62,523 nucleotides of DNA, taken from the NCBI GenBank assembly GCA_033442325.1, contig JAWQFM010000004.1, positions 1,555,895 through 1,618,417 of the forward strand, written 5' to 3'. The translations under genes were made by a program, and so were the position numbers. Position 1 is the first letter of the stretch. Every line of letters starts with the position of its first letter. Positions 9,717 through 61,870 of this stretch are shown in pieces. Under the pieces are notes generated by a model. That model was not told where the DNA came from. It saw only the letters and a list, made by a program, of their open reading frames with translations, and ran no database searches. Origin of the DNA: Salpingoeca rosetta. Lineage: Eukaryota; Protista; Choanoflagellata.

Positions 9717-9819
9717 TGTTTGTTTGATTCATTCACCTCTCGTCTTGTCTACTTTCACATTACACTACTTACACTACCGACATCTCGGTACAACAGGAAG
9801 AGCGCCGTCTGAAGTGACA

Positions 9820-12002
9820 GAAGCAGCGCCCGTGCTTGCGGTATAACCGGCATCAGCACCAACGCCTTCTTGCGCAGCCGCTTCAGCTCGCTGTCCAGCA
9901 ACCAACTCCTTGGCCACGGACATGGGCACCTGGCACACGTAGCGTGTGGGCCGGATGTGGGCGATGGTGCGGAACGTCGACTCCATCGTAGGGATGACCG
10001 TCTGCATCACATCGCGGCGGCCAGCCACCATCCATCCACACATTGCGCTCAGTGGGCGTGCCAATCACGTCCTGCGGCGCAACGTAGCTCACCACGCCGT
10101 CCTGCTTGCGGCACAGCGTGCGGCTGGCCTTGGTGAGATAGTTGAACAGCTTGCGCTTCAGGAAGGTGACGTCTGCCTCGGACATCTCCGGCACGTGCGA
10201 CGTGTCAATGACCGGAAGGTCGAGCACGTGGCACAGGTACTCCTTGAGGGTGTCCTGCACCGCGTTGTCAAACGCCGTCAGCTGCCGCTGCATGCCCTCC
10301 ACGGTCACGGGCACGCTCGAGGCGCACGCGTCCCTGTCCTCCGCGCTGGGCTTGCACACATACACGCGGAACTTCGGGCCAGCTCCAGCAGCTGCGAATG
10401 TAGGAAGCGGTATTGCATGCCCGTGACGCTGATCGTTGTCTGCGACTTGATGTTGGCGCCGACGGTGCTGTTGATGTAGCTGAGCCCGCGCTCCCTGTCC
10501 TGATCCAGGTAGTAGTACAGCGAGTACTCCAGCAGCATGGCGCCGTCCAGGTCGCACGTGTGTATCAGCGCCTGCTGGGGTGCCACGGGCGATGCGATGG
10601 GCGGGGTGCTGGTGACGGGCGGCGGCCGCACAAACTCCACATCCCGCATGGCCCCGTGTGTCGTGTCTGCGTAGGGCAGCAGGCCAAGCGTCGGGTAGCG
10701 CACGAGCTTGAGGCCGTAGTCGTTCAGCACGTGCTCCATGATCTTGTCGTCGCCCAGCACGCGGTCGCTGCGGGCACACGGGTGGAAGGTCGGCGCGAGT
10801 AAGCTTGCAAGCAGCTTGGCCTGCGACCACACCAGCACGGCGGTACTGCCCGTGAAGCAGATGCGGTTGCCCATAGTTGCAGCCGCCAGCACATTCAAGT
10901 CCTTGGACACGCTGCTCTTGTTGAATGCGTCGACGAGGTCCGACAGGAGGCCGCCCAGCTTGGGGTCGAGCACCGCCACGTGCATGTCGTTCGGGTAGCA
11001 CAGCCGCGCCACAAACGTGTGCGAGACGGAGGTGGCAAACTGCATCTTGCGCACGCACGCATGCGCCGCACGCGTGTCCGTTGTCTCCAGCACAAACACG
11101 CGCTGCAGTGTGGTCTCAGAGGACGAACTGCGGTTCTTGCTGTAGTCACTGCCAGCATCGCCATCTTTCTTGTACTGATGAGGGTCGTGCACAGCCGTGG
11201 GCTTGGCAGCAACATCATGTGCCTCACTATCACCTCCACCATCCTGCTGCTGCTGTTCCCCTTGTTCTTGTTCTTGTTCAGTTATGCGGGTGTTGGCAAA
11301 CGGCTGGATGTGGGACAGCGTGTCCTCGAGGGACTGTGGGATGGGCACAAGCTTCGCCTTGCCACCAACTCAAACGCCTGCACAATGTCGCGGCCCGTGG
11401 TGGGCTTGCTGTGCAAGGTACAGGTGACGACAATGCGGTGCAGCGGTGCGTGCCGCGCCTCCAGACGACAGGCGCTCGCTGCCGTGTCAATGGGCAGTGG
11501 CAGCAGGCTCCGAAACGTCTCCTCGCTGTCGGCAACCCCGTCCACGCTCGCACAGCGCAGGTCCGGGAAGACCTGCAGCGACTGGAAGTTGACGCCGGCG
11601 CGCTCCAGCGTCGCCTGCACGCTGCGGTACGTGTCGGTTGGCCAGGACATGGCGGCAGTCAGGCCTTTTGCTGTCACGCTTCCTGCCTGCCTCGGTCAGG
11701 TAGAACGTGATGCGCTTTGCCTGGCCCGCAACAGGCGCCGGCGTGATGGATGTTGGGGACGCAGGGGAGGAGGACGTGGAGTCCTTGCCCTTGCTCTTCC
11801 AGTTCTTTGCCTTTGGGTCTGGGAACACGTTGAGCTTCGTGCCCAGCACCTCCCGCTGGTCGTACAGGCGGACCATCAGCTCCGCGCTCTCCCGTGACAC
11901 AAACCTGTTGCAGGGGGAGTTGGTTGGTTGGTTGAGGACGTGGTTGAGGGAAGCGCACGCATGCTCATGCAGAATGAAGTTGCAGGAGCATCTGTGCATG
12001 CA

Positions 12003-12042
<40 letters not shown>

Positions 12043-12840
12043 TCGCCTACCTGAATATGCCCCTGACGCGGTTGCCGTGCCGCTTGTACGTGTGGGAGTG
12101 AAAGCCACTGTTTGCCTTGGCGAGCGAGGGCAACACCTCCTCAAGACCTTCGGGCACGGGCTCGACCCACACGGACCACAGCTCGTCCGCCGTCCAGGCG
12201 GGGCAGTCCCGGTCGCGGCGGGCCGTCCGCTGCACCTGCCCAATAGGGAAGTTCGTCATCTCCCTCAGGAGGCGCTCGCCAACCTTACGCGTCGCGCAGC
12301 TGCACATGTGTGTGTGTGTGTGTGTGTTTGAGTGAGTTGAGGGTGTATCGGTGCGGGATGTAGACAGGGATTACACAAGCATGATGAGAACTTGACAGTC
12401 GCATCCTCGCGCCATTACCCGTCACCACATGTCGTCATTCCCATCATGATCCTCGCATGCAACAAACACCTCCTCAACCGGTTACAAACCCACAACATTA
12501 CCACATTACTACCACCCCACCCATCACCACCATCACCTCCAACCAGTCAGCAGCAGCTCACCTGACGCGGACCACCTGCCCCTGATGTTCGTCCAGCGGT
12601 GAAATGCTGATGATGCCTGCTGCTTGCCAAGGAGCGCGCGCACCAGCTCAAGCATGCCCATGTGGTACACGAGCACGTCAAACGGCCCAAGCGACGCCTC
12701 CTCTCCATCACCCTCGTCGCCATGTGCCAGTGGTGGTGCTGCTGTTGTGTATGGCTCCGGTTCGTGGCCAACTGGCGGCTGCCGGGTGAATGGCTCGTTC
12801 CGCTGCGCATGGTCGTGGGTGATGATGGGTGACGAGGGGT
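9820..12840 (-). pseudogene. Truncated duplicate of the macro-PARP gene (RRM and KH-like part only), frameshifted
   Basis: Same peptides as 56820-59840 (WTADELWSVWVEPVPEG, FVSRESAELMVRLYDQ, LLEYSLYYYLDQDRERG); lacks the macro, WWE and ART regions. Confidence 0.8.
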
Positions 12841-51513: not shown

Positions 51514-51922
51514 TTTGCTTCCTGGATGTGCAAGTAAGGTCGGAGGAGCGTCCAGAGAGAGTATGTGTCGATCTCGCCTGTGTTTGGTGTCACACCAACT
51601 GTGAAGGAGGAGCGAGACAGGCAGAAGGAAGTCGTCGGCTTGTGCGCAGGACAAACGGACACACGAAACAAGGAGCAGATCGGAGAAGAGAGGACAAGAG
51701 GGAATCACGTAAGAATCAAACACGACCAAATGCGGAGAGTTGTGAACGCTGCCACCAACAATCTACAATGAAAAGGAAGACAGCAGACATCCAAAACGCC
51801 AGAACACACCACCCCATTCTCTCAGTTCTCTCTCTTGCTCCCTCTCCTCTTCCTTCCTCCTTCTTTACTTGTCCTTGCCAGTCCAACCCAAGCACCCCCT
51901 TCCCCGCGCACCTCAGAGCAGC

Positions 51923-53134
51923 ATGACGCCCCGCTTCTTCTTCCTCTTGTTGTTGGGAGCACTGCTGCTGGCGTTGATTGGACAGCGTTCCGGCCTTTGC
52001 ATGGGAGAGGTGACGCTGGTGGAGGATGATGTGGGCGCGTTTCACATCAACACGAGCGATCCAATGAGCCAACCCGTGTTTGTGAACGGGATGAATGTGC
52101 ACGAGACTTTGGGTATGTTGATGAGTACCGTGTCGGCGCAGCAGAGCGCGATCGATCGTGCTTATGGGAAAGTGTGCACTCCCAGCGCCAGCACATTTGG
52201 GCAACTCAGTTCAACGAGCGCAAAGTGGTTTGGGGGTGTACTGGCAAACAATGGACTGATCTACGCTGCACCATTCAACTTGCCTTCTGTACTCATCATC
52301 AACCCCAGGACCAATACCGTCGACACCACCACCATCTCGGGACTTGGAACGGATCCAGCCAAGTGGGCTGGTGGGGTGATGGCACACAACGGCCTCATCT
52401 ACATGTTCCCTTCAAACAGGGAGACCATGCTCATCATCGACCCAGACACCAATGAGGTTGACACCACGAGCATCCACTCCCTTGGTACTGGTAGCTACAA
52501 GTGGTACAGTGGTGTGGTGGCGAGGAATGGCCTCATTTTCGGCATTCCGTACTCTGCCACGTCTGTGCTGATCGTCGATCCAGAAATCAACACAGCCGAC
52601 ATCACCACGCTGTCCGGGCTGTCGAGCGAGGGATACAAGTGGTACAGCGGTGTGGAGGTGGAGAATGGTTTGATCTATTGCATTCCACGTGATGCTACAA
52701 GCATCCTCATCATCAACCCTGAGTCCTTGACGATGGACCTCACCACCATCAGTGGCCTCGGCACTGGCAAGAAGTGGTGGGGCGGCGTGCTTGCACGTAA
52801 TGGCCTCATCTACGCCATACCAGCTTTCTCTGCAACGACACTTGTCATCAACCCAGCTACAAACGCCACCAACGAGCTTCTTGTTGTAGCTGAGACATCC
52901 AGTATCAAATGGGTTGGTGGCGTGCTCGCACCCAATGGCAACATCATTGGCATCCCATTCAGCTCGCCATCCGTCCTAATTGTCGACCCAGCCGCCAACA
53001 CCACCGACACCACGACTATCGATGATCTTGCTGGATCCTACAGCTGGTGGGGTGGTGTGCTCGCCCCAAATGGTCTCGTCTACGGCATCCCTTCTTATTC
53101 CGAGTCCGTTCTCGTGATCGATCCTGGGTGCTGA
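51923..53134 (+). CDS. Secreted coiled-coil/7-blade beta-propeller family, copy I (intact)
   Basis: ATG 51923 MTPRFFFLLLLGALLL, module, 25-aa coil, 7 repeats, IDPGC*. Confidence 0.9.
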   Translation: MTPRFFFLLLLGALLLALIGQRSGLCMGEVTLVEDDVGAFHINTSDPMSQPVFVNGMNVHETLGMLMSTVSAQQSAIDRAYGKVCTPSASTFGQLSSTSAKWFGGVLANNGLIYAAPFNLPSVLIINPRTNTVDTTTISGLGTDPAKWAGGVMAHNGLIYMFPSNRETMLIIDPDTNEVDTTSIHSLGTGSYKWYSGVVARNGLIFGIPYSATSVLIVDPEINTADITTLSGLSSEGYKWYSGVEVENGLIYCIPRDATSILIINPESLTMDLTTISGLGTGKKWWGGVLARNGLIYAIPAFSATTLVINPATNATNELLVVAETSSIKWVGGVLAPNGNIIGIPFSSPSVLIVDPAANTTDTTTIDDLAGSYSWWGGVLAPNGLVYGIPSYSESVLVIDPGC

Positions 53135-53910: not shown

Positions 53911-56900
53911 TCAAACAACACCTGCTACGAAACAAACCACCCCGCAACCCTCGTTAACGCAAGACAACCAAACTGGCGTACCAATCTGACCAACTGTCAC
54001 TAGTCTAGCTTGTAGGTCCTTCAAGAAGGCACCAGCAGCGACTGACTGTAGCCAAGGTTGAGACAGCTGGCATTGCCAAGAATGTTCTGGTTGTTGTTGG
54101 GATTGTTGTTCTGGGTTGTTGTTGTCTTGGGGGCTACCTCTGATTCCGTACGCGCCGTAGCCGTTATTCTCAGCGACAGCACCATCACCGGGAGCATCGT
54201 TTTGGGGTGGCAGGGGTCGCTGTGATTGATCGCCATTATCACGTGGCAGATCATCACCACCATCACGTGGCGGACCATCACCACTATCACGTGGCGGATC
54301 ATCACCATCGCCACCATCACCACCGCCATCAGCGGCATCCTCACTCCCAGCCGTGAGTCGCATGCCCCTCACTTCAGTACCTTCCACTTTCGCAGTAGGC
54401 TCACTTCCACGGTCATCATCACTCCCCCTCCCCGACGACTGGCGCGACTACTTCTTCTTTCGCATCCTCTGATTCGTCCACTTCCTCCTCAACATCAACA
54501 GCATCATCGTCAAAGTAGATGATGTACTCCGGGTAGCACATGCCGTTGTCATAGATGACAAACAGGTCCGTATCGCCGTCGAAACCGCAAACGGAATGTA
54601 GAACACAGTCCCACCAGCAGCAGAAGCAGTCATGCGTCCACCAGGACCTTCGGCACCACCTGAAGTCCCTTCACTCTCTTCACCAGCAGCAACGCGGCCG
54701 CTTCCTTCTCCTTCGTCACCACCATGGCGAGAAACAGCAGAAACAGCAGTTGCAGCGACATCATCATCAGCACCATGATCAGCAACGTCATTCGGCTGGG
54801 GCGTCAATACATCGACATACACGTGCCGCTCGCTGGCGGTGTCGTTCTTGCCTGTTGCGCTGCCCTCGTGGTGGCCACACTTGACAGCAAACGACGGGTC
54901 GCGGCTGAAATACAGGCCCGGGCGAAAGTAGCCCTCCGCGCTGGCGTAGTTGATGGTCAGGTCAAGCTCGCTCCTGCAGATGCCATGCAGCAGGCGGTGC
55001 ACAAACACGTTGTAGTCGTCGCCAGAGGGCGGCGCAATGACGCTGGACAGGTTTGGTGGCGCGGGCCGCCAGTACACGCGGTGCACGCTCTCCAAGTACC
55101 GCTTGAACAGCGACACGTTCTGCACACGCTGCACGCGCAGGTTTCGTGGGCGAAGCGGCTCCAACAGGGGGCGCACGCACGTGGCCCAGCTCGTCCTCGT
55201 TGGTCACATCAACAAGCAGCTGACCCTCGCGCATGTCCCAGCGGTCCGGAATCTCAAAGATGGCCTTTGGCTCCAGCTTCGACCGCTGCTCGTCCAACCA
55301 CCCGCCGCACGCACTCAATCTCAGGCGCAGGTCGTTCTTGTGCATGCCCACGTGCTCCACTCACGTACACCCAGTGGTCCTGGAAGTCCACCGTGAAGTA
55401 GCGGTGAACCACTGGATCTTGAAGAAGCACGCCGACTTCCACGCCTTGCGGTTCTTGTACTCCAGCCACCGCTGCAGGACATCTGGATCAACCGTCCGGC
55501 GCATGTTGCGCTCGTCCTCCGCAGCCGCAGTTGCACGGGCATCCGCCACCACGCGGGCGGCCTCCTCCTCACTCATCTTGTCGTGCTCCTTGTGCAGGTA
55601 CTTGTCGGGGAAGCGCCCGCACGGCTTTGTCACCATCAACTTGGGCATCTCGCGCGCATGCTCCGCCGCAACGCCGCCAGCAGCGACACCCTTGTGTTTA
55701 CCGACGCTGCCACCTCTGGCCATCACTGCCATCATCACCACCACCACCATTACCAACATCACCACCACCACCAACGTCATCCGTCGTTGTCAGCATTGCT
55801 GCGCTTGCACTTGGCAGCGATGGCTGCATGGTATTTGTTGAAGGCGTTCTCAATCAGCAGCCTCGCGTCGTGCGTAAGCCCGTTCCACGCCGCCTTGTTG
55901 TCCAGCTCCGCCTTGGAGGGCGGCTCCGTGTACGTTGGCCCCGTGTACAGCCACTTTGGATGGGGTCAGCTGGCGTCTCGTCGGCCAACCCATCCAGTGC
56001 GCTGCGCTGCAGGTCCTCATACAGCCCACTGCCCACCTTCTCGCCGTAGTACTTCTCAAACGTCTGCTTAAACGCCGACAGCATGCTCACGTCCTTGGTG
56101 ATGATGGTCACGCGGATGGTGTCGAAGAGCGTGCCGTCGCGGCCCACCTCGTCAATCACCTCAAACAGCGTGCATGCAGATGCGTATGGGGAGCAGGGGA
56201 AGGCGCCGCACCCGAGCGCGCACGTGGCGAGCGAGCGGATGTTGTTGTCCCGCGCCGTCGTCAGCAGCGCGCGGTACGCCGTCGTCAGGTCCGCAGCCGT
56301 CTGCGCCACCGTGCTGCCATGCCAAACTCGGGTGCAAAGTTTGGCGCAACCACGTGCAGCACGTGCTCAATGTTGGACGAGAGGGCCAGCGCACCGGACG
56401 TGGTCACGCGCGCCTCGTTGTACCGCAAGGGGGCCGCTCCTCTCGGCGTTCATGTCGCGGTCGTTGGTGATGCTTCCCTCGCGAATCTCCGCATGCAGCT
56501 GCACCGCGAGCAGCGTCTCGCTGATGGTGTGGTACTGGTATGGCTCCACCTCCCACACGGCCTGCTTCACCTTGGCCGGGAACAGCCTCTCGCACGTGGT
56601 CAGCAACATCACTTCCGACGCCGCCACCACTTCCATGCGCGGGCCTTTAAGCACGGCGTGGGCACTGAAGTTGACAGGCTGTCGCCCCTGCCAGAATCAT
56701 ACACACCCTTTGCTCGCTGTTGTGATGTTACTCCTACGTGCGCGGCTTGCGCCATCGTCGCCAGCAGCAGAAGGAGCAGAAGAAGCAGTGGCAGCAGAAG
56801 CATTTGCAGTTGCCGAAGGAGCGCCCGTGCTTGCGGTATAACTGACATCAGCACCAACGCCTTCTTGCGCAGACGCTTCAGCTCCTTGGTCACGGACATT

Positions 56901-59290
56901 GGCACCTGGCACACGTACCGCGTGGGCCGGATGTGGGCAATGGTGCGGAACGTCGACTCCGTCGTTGGGATGACCGTTTGCATTAGATCTCGGCGGCCAG
57001 CCACCATCCACACGTTGCGCTCAGTGGGCGTGCCAATCACGTCCTGTGGCGCAATGTAGCTCACCACGTCGTCCTTGCTGCGGCACACCGTGCGGCCGGC
57101 CTTGGTCAGGTAGTTGAACAGCTTGCGCTTCAGGAAGGTGACGTCCGACTCGGACATCTCCGGCACGTGCGACGTGTCAATGACCGGCAAGCCGAGCACG
57201 TGGCACAGATACTGCTTGAGCGTGTCCTGCACCGCGTTGTCAAACGCCGTCAGCTGCCGCTGCATACCCTCCACAGTCACGGGCACGCTCGAGGCGCACG
57301 CGTCCCTGTCCTCTGCGCTGGGCTTGCGCACATACACGCGGAACCTGCGGGCCAGCTCCAGCAGCTGCGAGTCCAGAAAGCGGTATTGCATGCCCGAGAC
57401 GCTGATCTTCATCTGCGACTTGATGTTGGCGCCGGCGGTGCTGTCGATGTAGCTGAGCCCACGCTCCCTGTCCTGGTCCAGGTAGTAGTACAGCGAGTAC
57501 TCCAGCAGCATGGCGCCCCGCCGTCCAGGTCGCGCGTGTGTGTCAGCACCTGCTGGGGGTGCCACGGGCGATGCGATGGGCGGGGTGCCGATGACGGGGG
57601 GGGGGGCCTCACAAATTCCACACATCCCGCACGGCCCCGTGTGCCGTGTCTGCGTAGGGCAGCAGGCCAGGCGTCGGGTAGCGGACCAGCTTGAGGCCGT
57701 AGTCGTTCAGGACGTGTTCCATGATCTTGTCGTCGCCCAGCACGCGGTCGCTGCGGGCAAACGGGTGGAAGGCGGGCGCGAGGAAGCTTGCAAGCAGCTT
57801 GGCTTGCGACCACACCAGCACGGCGGTACTGCCCGTGAAGCAGATGCGGTTGCCCATGGTTGCAGCCGCCAGCACATCAAGGTCCTTGGCCACGCTGCCC
57901 TTGTTGAATGCGTCGACGAGGTCCGACAGAAGGCCGCCCAGCTTGGGGTCGAGCACCGCCACGTGCATGTCGTTCGGGTAGCACAGCCGCGCCACAAACG
58001 TGTGCGAGACAGAGGTGGCAAACTGCATCCTGCGCACACACGCATGCGCCGCACGCGTGTCTGTCGTCTCCAGCACAAACACGCGCTGCAGCGTCGTCTC
58101 AGAGGACGCACCGCTGCTCTTGCTGTCGTCGCTGTCAGCATCGCCGTCTTTCTTGTACTGATGAGGGTCGTGCACAGCCGTGGGCTTGGCAGCAACATCG
58201 TGTGCCTCACTACCACCTTCACACTGCTGCTGTGCTCCTTGTTCTTGTTGTTGTTCAGCCATGCGCGTGTTGGCAAACGGATGGATGTGGGACTGCGTGT
58301 CCTTGAGGGACTGCGGGATGGGCACAAGCTTTGCTGTGCCGCCAAAGTTCGTCTCAACCGCCTGCACAATGTCGCGGCCCGTGGTGGGCTTGCTGTGCGG
58401 GGTGCACGTGACAACAATGCGGTGCAGCGGTGCCTGACGCGCCTCCAGACGACAGGGGCTCAACGCCGTGTCAATGGGCAGTGGCAGCAGGCTCCAGAAC
58501 GTCTCCTCGCTGTCGGCAACCACGTCCACGCTTGCACAGCGCAGGTCCGGGAAGACCTGCAGCGACTGGAAGTTGACGCCCGCGCCGCGCAGTACGTGTT
58601 GGTGGGCCAGGGCATGGCGGCAGTTAGGCCTTTTGCTGTCACGCTGCGTTGCTGCCTCGCTCAGGTAGAACGTGAAGCGCTTTACCTGGCCCGCAACAGG
58701 CGCTGGTGTGGTGGATGTTGGTGAGGCAGGGGAGGAGGACGTGGTGCCGTTGCCCTTGCTCTTCCAGTTCTTTGCCTTTTGGGTCTGGGAACACGTTGAG
58801 CTTCGTGCCCAGCACCTCTCGCTGGTCGTACAGGCGGACCATCAGCTCGGCGCTCTCCCGCGACACAAACCTGTTGTGAGGGGGAGTTGGTTGGTTGGTT
58901 GTTTGGTTGGTTGTTTGGTTGGTTGAGGACGTGGTTGAGGGAAGCGCACGCATGCTCATGCAGAATGGAGTTGGAGGAACATCTGTGCATGCACATACAC
59001 AGACACACACAGACACACACACACACCCATCGCCGACCTGAATGTGCCCCTGACGCGGTTGCCGTCCGGCCTGTATGTGTGCGAGTGAAAGCCGCCGTTT
59101 GCCTTGGCGAGCGAGGGCAGCACCTCCTCAATACCCTCGGGCACGGGCTCAACCCACACGGACCACAGCTCGTCCGCCGTCCAGGAGGGGCAGTCCGGGT
59201 CGCGGCGGGCCGTCAGCTGCACCTGCCCAAGAGGGAAGTTTGTCATCTCCCTCAGGACGCGCTCGCCAACTTCACGCGTCGCGCAGCTGC

Positions 59291-59349
<59 letters not shown>

Positions 59350-59840
59350 AGTGAGTTGAGGGTGTATCGGTGCGGGATGAAGAGAGGAACTGCACACAAA
59401 CATGATGAGTACTTGACTGCCGCATCCTCGCGCCATTACCCGCCACCACATGTCGTCATTCCCATCATGATCCTCGCATGCAACGAACACCTCCTCAACC
59501 GGTTACAATCCCCCAACATTACCGCACACCTCCAACCAGTCAGCAGCAGCTCACCTGACGCGGGCAACCTGCCCCTGATGCTCGTCCAGTGGTGTGATGC
59601 TGATGACGCCCTGCTGCTTCCCAAGGAGCGCGCGCACCAGCTCAAGCATGCCCGTGTGGTGCACAAGCACGTCAAACGGCCCAAGTGCCGCCTCATCAAC
59701 CTCTCCCTCATCCTTCTCGTCGCCATGTGCCGGTGGTGGTGCTGCTGTTGTGTATGGCTCCAGTTCGCGGCCGACTGGCGGCTGCTGGGTGAATGGCTCG
59801 TTCCGCTGCGCATGGTCGTGGGTGATGATGGGTTACGAGG
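53911..59840 (-). pseudogene. PARP14-like macro-PARP: RRM x2, KH-like region, Macro, WWE, ART catalytic domain, acidic tail; multiple frameshifts
   Basis: RRMs (PFDVLV..VARVSCATREVGERVL; LWSVWVEPVP..GTFRFVSRESAELMVRLYDQREVLGTKLNV). Macro (HVLHVVAPNF..LTTAYRALLTTARDNNIRSLATCALGCGAF). WWE (KWLY..AAWNGL..LIENAF). ART (IPDRWDM, VQRVQNVSLFKRY, RLLHGI, GLYFS, DLFVIYDNGMCYPEYIIYF). Confidence 0.8.
54238..54310. repeat. 24-bp coding tandem repeat x3 (GDDPPRDS-like) in the PARP tail
   Basis: ATCACGTGGCRGAYCATCACCAYY units. Confidence 0.8.
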
Positions 59841-61870
59841 GGTAAGAAGTGTTGAGAAGGAGAAGAATCGTGCCTTTTGGACTTTACACCGGCCACTGGT
59901 GCCCGCGTTCCAAGAGGAAACATGAGCTTCTCTAAATCCGCTCTCTCTCCCATCCTTCAATCCAACACACGCACGCAAGCGCATGTGCACCTGTATCGGG
60001 GGCAAAGTCGTTGAGCGGGTCCTTCGTGGTGATGCGCACCTGGATGCTGAATCCGCAGGTGGCAATTGCGTCCTGTTCGAACTCAATCATCTTACAGCGT
60101 CGCGCCGCCAGCAAGCATCAGCTGCGATTGCACAAGGTCAACGCCAGTCACCTGGTGGGAAGAATAAAGGAGGGAGAAGGAGAGGAAGGAGATGATGGAG
60201 GAAGTGTAAGTGAGGTGGGGGAGGAATGAAGCAGAACAGTACGCCACAAACATCAAAGTGGACAAAGCACCATCAACAGTGCTGCTTCACCGAACCACCA
60301 CAGCTCACCATCTCCGCGACTTGAATGCGCAGATTCACCTCCTTGAAGTAGTGACTGCACCACATTGCGCACGTTGGATGGTTGGTGTGAGTGTTGGGGC
60401 AGGTGCGATTATGTTTGTCAACACCAAACGAGTGCATGCACGCACCACAACACCATATCTCCACCCCCAACACCCCAACACCACACTGCTACACTGGCTC
60501 ACCGGCCATCGGATGTGTCGACAAGGACCTCGACGGTGTCGGTGTTGCGGTGGTTGAGGGAGCGGCCAAGTGCAACAGCGTCCTGAGGGCAGGAGAGGGG
60601 GGAAGGGAGAGGGAGGGAAGTAGCAGACGTGAGAGAGAGGAGAGGAACAGGGTTGAGGGACGATCACGATCACAGGTGAGGTGCGTCTGTTGTGACCGCA
60701 GCACAAGGACAGCACAAGCACAGACACACACACGCACATGCACATGAGGCAAACCTGGCAGAGGTGTTGGCGGACATCGGAGGCGCGGGGAAAGGGGCAA
60801 CCTTAACGACCCTGACAACACAAATGGTGATGCGCGTGCATGGGCATGAGGTCGGATGTAGGTGATGATGAGTGTTGTAGATCACAGCAGTGGTACGCTT
60901 CTTACAGACACACACACACACACCTTTTGCTCCTTGGCGATGCAGACAACGTCGTCGAAAGTGAGGTAGGCGGCAATGGGGGCTTTGACGGTGCACAGCA
61001 TGTACGATTCATCAGCCTTGCAACGCTGCACGGATCTGAGACGAGGAAGGAAGCGTTGCAGGCGAGTGAGTGTGTGTGTGATGTATGTGTGCGTATGCGC
61101 TTACGTGTGTTGAGCACACAAGGCTGAGCAATGCAATGCAATGCAATGTAATGGAATGACCTCACACACACTCACACACACGCACCTTTGGATGAACAGT
61201 GTATTCTTCAGTCACGATGGCTGCCTCCTTCACATGTGTTCAACTCACGCCCTTCTTCTGCACTGCGTGATGAAGCTGTGTGCTGTGTGTGCTCTGTCCT
61301 TGTAGGTCCAGTCACGAGCTGATGAAGGAAGGCTGAGGGAAGGAAGACTGAGGACATGGAAGGATGGATGGATAGATGGATGGATGCGTTTCAACGTGCT
61401 TCCTTCCCACAACAACACACACACACAACAGTGGTGTTGTGTGTGGCTGGAAATCCAATGCATGATGCCCAACAATCGTCCACAACCACAACCACAGCCA
61501 AAACGCCACAAACAAACCAATCCAATCCTGTCTCCTCTTCTCTTGGTGCTGCGCCTGTCCTGCGAACAGACACGCGAACGAGGAGGAATGAGGCACACTT
61601 AACTTCTACTTCTACTCTTCTCCTCCTCTTCTCCTCTCCTCTCTTCTTCTTCACCCACTTGGAGTATGATGGCACCGATGAGAACGATGGGGTGCCTGCA
61701 GGCAGGTGGGTTGGTGCTGCTCCCCGCGCTGCTGCTGGTGGCGGCGGCAGTGTGCTGGATGCCGTTCATAAGCAGCGTTGCTGGAGAGGTGACGCTGGTG
61801 GAGGACGATGTGGGCGCATTTCACATCAACACGAGCGATCCAGCGAGCCAGCCCGTGTTTGTGAACGGGA
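56815..61870. repeat. Segmental duplication, copy 2 (paralogue of 9820-14830)
   Basis: Colinear similarity with scattered substitutions and indels. Confidence 0.9.
59991..61275 (-). pseudogene. Pyruvate carboxylase (biotin carboxylase domain) relic exons, copy 2
   Basis: YFKEVNLRIQV, DLVQSQLML..EQDAIATCGFSIQVRITTKDPLNDFAPDT and DDVVCIAKEQ. Confidence 0.75.

What the first reader, a model, noticed from the sequence alone, without database searches (positions are those of the whole stretch)
53911..59840. Hidden PARP14-like macro-PARP with an H-Y-L mono-ADP-ribosyltransferase triad
Seen after stitching frames: RRM-RRM-(KH-like)-Macro-WWE-ART, with H (LLHGI), Y (GLYFS) and L (DLFVIY..YPEYII) at the catalytic positions. 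Known: vertebrate PARP14 has RRM/KH/macro/WWE/ART domains and an H-Y-L triad; PARP9/14/15 are interferon-induced and antiviral. Inference: the architecture predates animals or arose convergently, and is duplicating and decaying here like an immune gene.
Basis: partly seen in the sequence, partly recalled or inferred. Interest (0 to 1): 0.8.

Follow-up and report, generated by a model that had tools for sequence, protein, structure and literature searches.

The report
Dead copy of choanoflagellate PARP14-like gene
This stretch of the Salpingoeca rosetta genome is a broken, apparently silent copy of a PARP14-like ADP-ribosyltransferase gene; a far better preserved copy on another contig is transcribed, and PARP14-like genes in choanoflagellates were already described in 2014.

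Summary
On the minus strand of 53.9-59.8 kb lie pieces of a macro-domain plus PARP-type ADP-ribosyltransferase gene, with H, Y and L at the catalytic positions. It is not a hidden working gene.

- **Breaks.** Only two of the frame changes are inherited GT..AG introns. About 22 are frame-breaking indels. Five larger deletions remove, among other things, the ADP-ribose-binding motif of the macro domain.
- **Copy family.** At least nine other copies on this chromosome share the same deletions, and every copy with upstream flank carries a pyruvate-carboxylase-like fragment in front. One already dead progenitor was therefore amplified, apparently as a passenger beside a propeller gene.
- **Parents.** The C25 locus has a 1996-aa open frame with Pfam Macro (1.5e-22) and PARP (6e-11). 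The C4 0.9-Mb locus is the annotated PTSG_02668 and lacks the transferase domain.
- **Expression.** RNA reads laid on the window carry C25 or C4 letters, almost never the window's.
- **Domain calls.** Structure models of the intact paralogue support tandem RRMs and a type-I KH module. WWE is not supported.
- **What is known.** The organism is Salpingoeca rosetta. The window's pieces are publicly annotated as hypothetical proteins (PTSG_02840 and a 506-aa model). Perina et al. 2014 already described PARP14-like macro-PARPs in choanoflagellates.

Interest is modest.

The parts
59935..61031 (-). Pyruvate-carboxylase-like (biotin carboxylase / ATP-grasp) gene fragment joined upstream of the macro-PARP remnant. 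It belongs to the duplicated unit, not to the PARP gene.
   Evidence: Motifs KADESYM (61019-60999), VTGVDLVQSQ (60151-60122) and DPLNDFAPDTG (60021-59989). The same fragment in sister copies scores Pfam CPSase_L_D2 at 9.5e-18 and 1.5e-9 in public models PTSG_11904 and PTSG_02793. It lies upstream of every degenerate copy with upstream flank and is absent at the C25 and C4 0.9-Mb parents.
59555..59832 (-). Exon-1 remnant: linker plus the first half of the first RRM-like unit (FDVLVHHTGMLEL...QGQVARV).
   Evidence: tblastn to PTSG_02668 variant residues 2-33 at 91% identity. The donor AG|GTGAGC is kept. The fold of the intact paralogue is RRM-like.
59287..59554 (-). Inherited intron 1, holding the (TG)26 microsatellite at 59294-59346.
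   Evidence: GT..AG ends are kept, and the junction rebuilds ...ARV|SCATRE as in the public spliced model P0015.
59038..59286 (-). Exon-2 remnant: second half of the first RRM-like unit and first part of the second.
   Evidence: tblastn to P0001 from residue 34. RRM topology and Foldseek hits for the paralogue model.
58871..59037 (-). Inherited intron 2 (CA-rich).
   Evidence: GT..AG ends are kept, and the junction rebuilds GTFR|FVSRE as in P0015.
57556..58870 (-). First part of the large exon: end of the second RRM-like unit and further alpha/beta modules, broken by frameshifts.
   Evidence: Non-3n indels at 58780 (+1), 58634 (+1), 58580 (-19), 57624 (+2) and 57606 (+2) relative to C25. RNA reads lack the extra base at 58777.
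56861..57555 (-). KH-like array remnant, bounded by the 743-bp deletion (at 57555) and the 379-bp deletion (at 56868).
   Evidence: 87% identical to C25 residues 475-709. The module ISVSGMQYRF...VPVTVEGMQ (57406-57260) corresponds to model residues 88-168. Those residues match type-I KH domains at Z 10.9-8.2 and multi-KH proteins in the Atlas.
55953..56660 (-). Macro-domain remnant lacking the N-x6-GGV ADP-ribose-binding segment.
   Evidence: Pfam Macro 9e-6 on profile positions 73-115 only. Deletions of 102 bp (at 56490) and 105 bp (at 56444), and frameshifts at 56428 (+1) and 56324 (+5). RNA loose ends at 56445 and 56490 read the missing segments.
55325..55965 (-). The fold is not established.
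   Evidence: No Pfam WWE above E 0.1; WWE_5 at E 0.24 only. hhalign against fish PARP14 WWE gives probability 0.09. Embedding search gives nothing. Indels at 55956 (-1), 55785 (+4), 55715 (+1), 55411 (-31), 55358 (-8) and 55327 (-391).
54422..55324 (-). Pre-transferase segment (IPDRW) and PARP-type transferase remnant, with H (54987-54985), Y (54912-54910) and L (54565-54563).
   Evidence: Collinear with zebrafish PARP14 and with the C25 and Tara orthologues. Deletions of 24 bp just after H-G and of 33 bp, and frameshifts at 55297, 55171, 54597 and 54428. Publicly annotated as PTSG_02840. Not detected by Pfam PARP.
53914..54421 (-). Out-of-frame remnant of the acidic C-terminal tail and the 3' end of homology.
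   Evidence: A 2-nt deletion at 54428 creates the stop after ...GEGE. Homology to C25 continues to about 53907.

Best explanation
The window feature is a non-functional, at most marginally transcribed pseudogene copy of a Salpingoeca rosetta PARP14-like gene. The parent layout is RRM-like units, a KH-like array, one macro domain, and a clade-3 PARP transferase domain with an H-Y-M/L triad.

A progenitor copy lost its own 5' end and gained a pyruvate-carboxylase fragment upstream. It also suffered five sizeable internal deletions. That dead unit was then copied at least ten times along this chromosome, together with the convergently oriented propeller gene where flank is available. Each copy has since collected its own frameshifts.

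The working function resides elsewhere.
- **C25 locus.** It keeps the KH-like region, macro domain and transferase in one 1996-aa open frame and is transcribed.
- **C4 0.9-Mb locus (PTSG_02668).** It keeps everything except the transferase.

Inferred for the intact protein, not shown here: it binds RNA through the RRM and KH modules, reads or removes ADP-ribose with the macro domain, and mono-ADP-ribosylates targets. The triad lacks the glutamate needed for chain elongation, as established for PARP10, PARP14 and PARP15.
For: - **Family size.** At least 10 copies at 85-90% identity, on C4 and C25.
- **Breaks.** About 22 non-3n indels and deletions of 743, 379, 391, 102 and 105 bp relative to C25.
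- **Shared deletions.** All degenerate copies L001-L009 and L012 share those deletions where their flanks are present. C25, C4 0.9 Mb and the Tara Oceans orthologue P0012 keep the segments.
- **Carboxylase fragment.** It lies upstream of every degenerate copy with upstream flank and upstream of neither parent. The propeller gene lies downstream in L001, L002, L009 and C25.
- **C25 open frame.** Pfam Macro 1.5e-22 and PARP 6e-11, 42.7 bits against a cut-off of 26.7. It is the only member of this family over the PARP cut-off in the genome.
- **Expression.** At the differences the tool listed, 90-100% of reads carry the non-window letter. Loose-end sequences match C25 exactly, five of them C25-specific.
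- **Assembly independence.** Independent DNA contigs (X16) and the 2013 public gene models reproduce the window sequence exactly.
- **Selection.** Ka/Ks is 0.27 between the two parents and 0.44-0.69 among dead copies.
- **Domain folds.** Tandem-RRM fold and type-I KH fold.
- **Transferase affinity.** A choanoflagellate-only profile hits PARP12 (3e-7), PARP15 (2e-5) and PARP14 (2e-4) before tankyrases (1e-3).
- **Macro affinity.** 34% identical to PARP14 macro 1.
Against: - Ka/Ks among the dead copies is below 1 (0.44-0.69). This could mean residual constraint, gene conversion from live copies, or only the bias of the uncorrected Nei-Gojobori method.
- A few reads (up to about 10% at some sites) do not carry the C25 letter, so very low transcription of this or a sister copy is not excluded.
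- Public annotation predicts proteins across these copies (PTSG_02840, PTSG_11904, PTSG_02793).
- C25 itself has a 4-nt deletion that puts its RRM exons out of frame with the 1996-aa frame, so the best copy may also be impaired or N-terminally shortened.
- The structure models have low mean confidence (pLDDT 54).
Confidence: 0.85

Rival explanations
1. It is a real, intron-rich gene. The frame changes are introns, and the public models (PTSG_02840 and the 506-aa model P0009) are genuine short proteins carrying a shortened transferase or KH module.
For: S. rosetta genes do have introns. Two of the frame changes are true GT..AG introns. Public gene models cover the locus at 100% identity. Ka/Ks among copies is below 1.
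Against: - No GT..AG joint was seen in the RNA reads over 6 kb.
- The reads carry C25 or C4 letters and read straight through the positions where the window has indels.
- The segments 'skipped' in the window are in-frame coding sequence in C25, C4 and the Tara orthologue.
- The models lack the macro binding motif and strands of the transferase fold.
Confidence: 0.05
2. The frameshifts are assembly or sequencing errors in an otherwise intact gene.
For: Long-read assemblies can carry indel errors.
Against: - X16 DNA contigs match the window with 0 differences over several pieces (table 8).
- The older public assembly's gene models match at 99.5-100%.
- The breaks include deletions of 100-740 bp shared by nine other loci.
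- Substitution divergence from the nearest copy is about 10%.
Confidence: 0.02
3. The dead copies are kept because they are useful as DNA or RNA. They might serve as donors for gene conversion that diversifies the expressed C25 and C4 genes, or as non-coding transcripts or small-RNA sources regulating them. That would be an immune-gene-like pseudogene reservoir.
For: - Many copies are clustered on one chromosome.
- Ka/Ks is below 1.
- An earlier first-stage note reports an identical 287-bp tract and mosaic ancestry between two copies in this window (s1-442343, not checked here).
- Vertebrate PARP14 is fast-evolving and antiviral (PMC13224862).
Against: - No test of gene conversion into C25 or C4 was done.
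- C25 and C4 are 95% identical to each other but only 88-90% identical to the dead copies.
- Little or no transcription of the window copy.
- Passenger duplication with the neighbouring propeller gene explains the copy number without any function.
Confidence: 0.07

Closest known systems
Vertebrate PARP14 (ARTD8)
   Same: - The order RRM units, then type-I KH units, then macro, then C-terminal clade-3 PARP domain.
- The pre-transferase 'P..W' segment.
- The motifs RVQN, HGT, G.G.YF and YPEY[LI]I.
- H-Y-L/M triad. Zebrafish PARP14 also has M at the third position.
- The macro domain is most similar to PARP14 macro 1, at 34% identity.
   Different: - One macro domain instead of three.
- None of the PARP14-specific Pfam RRM, KH or WWE families is detected (compare).
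- No demonstrable WWE.
- A KH-like module sits directly before the transferase.
- A long acidic insert lies inside the transferase domain, and a long acidic tail follows it.
- The window copy itself is broken.
PARP14-like macro-PARPs of non-vertebrates (sponge, lancelet, choanoflagellate, Amoebozoa) described by Perina et al. 2014, PMC4245714
   Same: Macro plus PARP, with RRM in some members. The genes are frequently duplicated and often clustered on one chromosome. The paper states that choanoflagellate clade-3 proteins carry macrodomain, RRM, WWE and PARP domains.
   Different: The paper does not, in the text I could read, name this locus, describe the dead-copy family or report KH modules. 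No supplementary accession list was available.
S. rosetta PTSG_02668 (XP_004996165, 'Macro domain-containing protein', 2791 aa)
   Same: A paralogue on the same chromosome (C4, about 0.9 Mb), 95% identical in DNA to the C25 gene. It has the same RRM, KH and macro layout and the same two introns.
   Different: It lacks the transferase domain and ends instead in two repeated RRM-like exons. It is intact where the window copy is broken.
Public models at or near the window: PTSG_02840 (380 aa), the 506-aa model P0009, PTSG_11904 and PTSG_02793
   Same: PTSG_02840 and P0009 are encoded by the window itself (54422-55131 and 55780-57511, at 99.5-100% identity). The other two are the same kind of copy at other loci.
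   Different: They are gene-finder constructs that jump frameshifts with predicted introns and fuse the carboxylase fragment to macro-PARP remnants. They carry no PARP annotation.

Membership tests
PARP catalytic domain (Pfam PF00644), clade 3 mono-ADP-ribosyltransferases | Profile match above the curated cut-off | tested here: not met
   Window pieces get no PARP hit at E<=1, and the window copy is absent from the genome-wide PF00644 scan at E<=0.01. The intact C25 paralogue does meet it, at 42.7 bits against a cut-off of 26.7.
PARP catalytic domain (Pfam PF00644), clade 3 mono-ADP-ribosyltransferases | H-Y-[I/L/M/T] triad instead of H-Y-E at the NAD site | tested here: met
   By alignment to zebrafish PARP14 and to the orthologues, the window has H (54987-54985), Y (54912-54910) and L (54565-54563). 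C25 has H-Y-M and the Tara orthologue H-Y-L. In the window, H/Y and L are in different frames.
PARP catalytic domain (Pfam PF00644), clade 3 mono-ADP-ribosyltransferases | Closer to PARP7/9-15 than to PARP1-3 or tankyrases | tested here: inconclusive
   A profile of the choanoflagellate transferase domains against the PDB gives PARP12 3e-7, PARP15 2e-5, PARP14 2e-4, tankyrases from 1e-3 and PARP10 0.2. PARP1-3 are absent. This ranking is only a proxy; no phylogeny was built.
PARP catalytic domain (Pfam PF00644), clade 3 mono-ADP-ribosyltransferases | Uninterrupted reading frame through the domain | tested here: not met
   Frameshifts at 55297, 55171, 54597 and 54428, and deletions of 24 and 33 bp.
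Macro domain (Pfam PF01661) | Complete domain including the N-x6-GG[VLI] ADP-ribose-binding segment | tested here: not met
   In the window only profile positions 73-115 match, at 26.1 bits. The 105-bp deletion removes IVNSANPDLMNDGGVAFAI..., and two frameshifts follow. C25 has the whole domain, at 1.5e-22.
PARP14-like macro-PARP architecture | N-terminal RRM domains | tested here: met
   Pfam RRM families do not hit this region. The AlphaFold2 model of PTSG_02668 residues 672-1000 shows two beta-alpha-beta-beta-alpha-beta units (pLDDT 55-82). Foldseek gives 179 PDB hits at E<=1e-3, and the top 50 are all tandem RRMs, best 1.8e-7. Embedding leads are RRM families, including RRM_PARP14_3. The test was made on the intact paralogue; the window holds broken remnants.
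PARP14-like macro-PARP architecture | Type-I KH domains between the RRMs and the macro domain | tested here: met
   No Pfam KH hit. The model has mean pLDDT 54, with 64-82 in residues 90-170. Foldseek is weak, at E>=0.008. In VIA-align against 48,161 chains, the top 27 are almost all type-I KH domains, at Z 10.9-8.2 and rmsd 1.5-3, covering whole domains. All Atlas shape rows are multi-KH proteins. The embedding score for KH_1 is 0.89. Confidence is moderate.
PARP14-like macro-PARP architecture | WWE domain before the transferase domain | tested here: inconclusive
   No Pfam WWE at E<=0.1. There is only WWE_5 at E 0.24 on a 61-aa piece. hhalign against fish PARP14 WWE gives probability 0.09. 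The embedding search gives nothing.
PARP14-like macro-PARP architecture | Three tandem macro domains | tested here: not met
   One Macro stretch in C25, PTSG_02668 and the Tara orthologue, against three in fish PARP14.
PARP14-like macro-PARP architecture | Orthology to animal PARP14 by phylogeny of the transferase or macro domains | not tested
   Only two fish PARP14 sequences were in hand. They were the best non-choanoflagellate hits in the word-filtered, length-limited search.

The most novel reading that the evidence does not exclude
The expressed C25 gene, and its Tara Oceans orthologue, would be true orthologues of animal PARP14 that already had the full RRM - KH array - macro - H-Y-L/M transferase layout before choanoflagellates and animals split. 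The KH array, recognised in human PARP14 only in 2023, would then be ancestral rather than an animal innovation. The transferase-bearing S. rosetta copy would be missing from the public proteome because it lies on a contig not represented among public models.
Probability: 0.45. Interest if true: 0.45.

Novelty: new member of a known kind. Interest (0 to 1): 0.3.

Why it matters
For genome annotation, several S. rosetta 'hypothetical proteins' are gene-finder artefacts laid over dead copies and should be flagged as pseudogenes. These are PTSG_02840, the 506-aa model, PTSG_11904 and PTSG_02793, including the odd 'ATP-grasp + macro' chimeras.

For PARP biology, the useful object is not this window but the C25 locus. 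It is an expressed choanoflagellate gene with KH-like, macro and H-Y-M transferase domains in one frame. It could be used to ask what a PARP14-like enzyme does in a unicellular relative of animals that has no interferon system.

The dead-copy family also illustrates how a disabled gene can reach ten copies purely as a passenger of segmental duplication. That is a caution against reading copy number as a sign of an arms race.

Tried and rejected
- **Window pieces against profiles.** Pfam on ten window ORF pieces gave only a partial Macro hit. phmmer of the window transferase and macro pieces against the PDB found nothing relevant. phmmer of the intact C25 transferase region also found nothing at E<=0.01; a two-sequence profile was needed.
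- **Rfam on the window.** Nothing.
- **RNA joints.** I expected introns, but no GT..AG joint appeared.
- **Distant homologues of the N-terminal 1200 aa.** Among 1.84 billion representatives there were only S. rosetta paralogues and one metagenomic cluster. No animal PARP14 was reached by sequence in the RRM and KH region.
- **Search for a public protein of the C25 transferase.** Only PTSG_02840 came back. The length windows searched were 306-975 and 1098-3493 aa, so a model of another length is not excluded.
- **WWE.** Tested by Pfam, hhalign and embedding, all negative or marginal.
- **Foldseek on the KH model.** No hit at E<=0.001. The exhaustive VIA search was needed.
- **Synteny in the Tara scaffold.** No propeller gene in the short flank.
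- **Paper search for the PTSG identifiers.** None found.
- **Transposon idea.** Rejected because the copies lie almost only on one chromosome, plus C25, and travel with host genes.

Full report
**What the genome is.** Earlier notes of this scan called it a 55-Mb choanoflagellate. Protein searches confirm Salpingoeca rosetta: the nearest public proteins carry PTSG_ names and S. rosetta accessions. The window is G000:C4:1555895-1618417.

**Checking the observation.** Translating the minus strand of 53.9-60.1 kb gives a chain of open segments that hop between all three frames.
- They include macro-like text (ATCALGCGAF) and transferase-like text (IPDRW, RVQNVS, LLHGI, GLYFS, DLFVIY..YPEYII).
- On the window pieces alone the profile evidence is thin. 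Pfam gives only the last third of a Macro domain (9e-6). It gives no PARP, RRM, KH or WWE.
- phmmer of the transferase piece finds no PARP structure.

**A multi-copy family with better preserved members.** A DNA search of the whole genome finds at least ten loci at 85-90% identity, nearly all on contig C4, plus one on C25. One of them is a second copy inside this window, at about 9.8-12.7 kb. Two loci are far better preserved.
- **C25:297435-291448.** This is one open frame of 1996 aa.
- **C4:901410-895918.** This is one open frame of 1831 aa.
- The C25 frame scores Pfam Macro 1.5e-22 and PARP 6e-11, at 42.7 bits against a cut-off of 26.7. In a genome-wide PF00644 scan it is the only member of this family above the cut-off.
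- The C4 0.9-Mb locus is the public gene PTSG_02668, a 'Macro domain-containing protein' of 2791 aa. It has no transferase domain and ends in two repeated RRM-like exons.
- A 2555-aa orthologue at 28-47% identity sits as one uninterrupted gene on a Tara Oceans metagenome scaffold. It is collinear from the KH-like region through macro to the transferase, with H-Y-L.

**What the frame changes in the window are.** Two are inherited introns.
- 59554-59287 holds the (TG)26 repeat, and 58871-59037 is the second intron. Both keep GT..AG.
- Both rebuild exactly the junctions of the public spliced model...ARV|SCATRE and GTFR|FVSRE.

Everything downstream is one large exon in the parents. There the window differs from C25 by about 22 indels whose length is not a multiple of three. 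It also differs by deletions of 743, 379, 391, 102 and 105 bp, and by smaller in-frame losses.
- The 105-bp loss removes the N-x6-GGV ADP-ribose-binding segment of the macro domain.
- A 24-bp loss follows the catalytic H-G directly, and a 33-bp loss removes a strand of the transferase fold.
- H and Y lie in one frame and the third triad residue in another.

These are not assembly errors. DNA contigs of an independent run match the window without a single difference over several pieces (table 8). Gene models from the older public assembly match it at 99.5-100%.

**One dead progenitor, then amplification.**
- Every degenerate copy (L001-L009, L012) lacks the same deleted segments, wherever its flanks are present. 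C25 and C4 0.9 Mb keep them.
- The Tara orthologue has homologous sequence in those segments, so they are deletions, not insertions in the parents.
- Every degenerate copy with upstream flank carries a fragment of a pyruvate-carboxylase-like ATP-grasp gene directly in front. Neither parent has it. In the window it lies at 59935-61031.
- A convergent gene for a propeller-repeat protein follows the unit in L001, L002 and L009, and also at C25.
- The simplest history is this: a copy of the C25-type two-gene block was rearranged and crippled, and the block was then duplicated repeatedly. The macro-PARP remnant travelled as a passenger and gathered copy-specific frameshifts (different open frames per copy).
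- Ka/Ks by Nei-Gojobori is 0.27 between the two parents and 0.44-0.69 among dead copies. Constraint is relaxed but the ratio is not 1. I regard this as compatible with neutrality given the uncorrected method, and note it as a caveat.

**Expression.** I laid two 2026 RNA-seq runs and two contig sets on 54200-60199.
- Most RNA reads were only 95-99% alike.
- At the differences the tool listed (40 of 186 rows were shown), 90-100% of reads carried the non-window letter.
- They also lacked the window's extra bases at 58777, 56427 and 55296. They carried the base missing at 55956 and the 31 nt missing at 55411.
- Their loose ends read into the segments deleted in the window.
- All of these loose-end sequences occur exactly in C25. 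Five of them occur only there, including two downstream of the transferase domain.
- Hence the transferase-bearing C25 gene is transcribed, and the window copy contributes at most a few percent.
- No GT..AG joint was seen, which argues against the reading that the frame changes are introns.

**Domain calls, tested on the intact relatives.**
- **Macro.** Secure. It is most like PARP14 macro 1, at 34% identity and E 1e-15.
- **Transferase.** Secure by Pfam, and collinear with fish PARP14 from the 'P..W' segment to YPEY[LI]I.F. H, Y and M or L sit at the triad positions. A choanoflagellate-only profile ranks PARP12, PARP15 and PARP14 ahead of tankyrases, and does not reach PARP1-3.
- **RRM.** Pfam fails. 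An AlphaFold2 model (mean pLDDT 54, with 55-82 over the first 160 residues) shows two beta-alpha-beta-beta-alpha-beta units. Foldseek returns 179 PDB hits at E<=1e-3, and the top 50 are all tandem RRMs.
- **KH.** Pfam fails and Foldseek is weak. An exhaustive structural comparison puts type-I KH domains in nearly all of the top 27 places, at Z 10.9-8.2 with whole domains covered. The Atlas shape search returns only multi-KH proteins. Embedding leads agree.
- **WWE.** No support beyond a WWE_5 hit at E 0.24.
- **Differences from PARP14.** There is one macro domain, not three, and none of the PARP14-specific Pfam families is detected (compare).

**Comparison with what is known.**
- Perina et al. 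2014 (PMC4245714) state that the macro-PARP ancestor arose early in unikonts and is 'PARP14-like'. They also state that such genes are frequently duplicated and clustered, and that choanoflagellate clade-3 proteins carry macrodomain, RRM, WWE and PARP domains.
- A 2026 review repeats this view (PMC13224862).
- I did not find the following described: the dead-copy family, the carboxylase chimera, the KH fold in the choanoflagellate protein, and the fact that the only copy with macro and transferase in one frame is on C25.
- No public protein model of that C25 copy turned up in the length ranges I could search. No paper names the PTSG identifiers.

**Open points.**
- C25 has a 4-nt deletion relative to both C4 and the window. 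This puts its RRM exons out of frame with the 1996-aa frame. I could not check it in reads.
- WWE is untested by structure.
- No phylogeny was made.

**Verdict.** This is a real feature, correctly recognised at the level of family and triad. It is a pseudogene of a known kind of gene, in a lineage where that kind was already reported.

Noticed in passing
window 59935-61031 (-), and upstream of L002-L005, L007-L009: A pyruvate-carboxylase-like ATP-grasp fragment is joined in front of every degenerate macro-PARP copy that has upstream flank. Public models PTSG_11904 and PTSG_02793 merge the two into chimeric 'ATP-grasp + macro' proteins, which are probably annotation artefacts.
   Followed up: partly
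window 9804-12661 (-): A second degenerate copy of the same unit lies in this window (C4:1565714-1568983). It covers only the RRM to KH part and is flanked by another propeller-repeat gene.
   Followed up: partly
window 51869-53134 (+); L002 8443-9165; L009 398-1240; C25 289130-290320: A gene for an NGLIY-repeat (propeller-like) protein lies tail to tail with the macro-PARP unit at the parent locus and at several copies (56-78% protein identity). It stays open while the PARP part decays, so it may be what selection kept in these duplications.
   Followed up: partly
G000:C25:297413 (L014 about 9414): The best-preserved, expressed copy has a 4-nt deletion (CCCA) relative to both C4 0.9 Mb and the window. 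This puts its RRM exons out of frame with the 1996-aa macro-transferase frame. It could be a real lesion, an internal start or an assembly error.
   Followed up: partly
G000:C4:894538-895750 (L013): PTSG_02668 has lost the transferase domain. It ends in two near-identical tandem exons encoding an RRM-like unit (Pfam RRM_1 1.7e-6), each preceded by CT/CA microsatellites.
   Followed up: partly
L006 4698-5096 and 5508-6212: One degenerate copy (C4, about 1.08 Mb) carries two transferase-tail remnants in tandem, and alone keeps the 31-nt segment lost in the other dead copies.
   Followed up: no
G000: C13:1698708, C32:33875, C20:1226891, C24:1202293, C2:37708, C28:969913, C27:1038676, C34:18375, C25:56362: The genome-wide PARP scan shows a separate set of about nine dispersed loci. 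Each has an open frame of roughly 370-405 aa matching PARP profile positions 38-190. There is also a pair of long PARP-bearing frames at C31:304-312 kb.
   Followed up: no
L015 (TARA_SAMEA2623477_METAG-scaffold_4051): A marine metagenome scaffold carries an intact 2555-aa orthologue as one uninterrupted frame, with CA-repeat sequence at its 5' end. It is probably from an uncultured choanoflagellate.
   Followed up: partly
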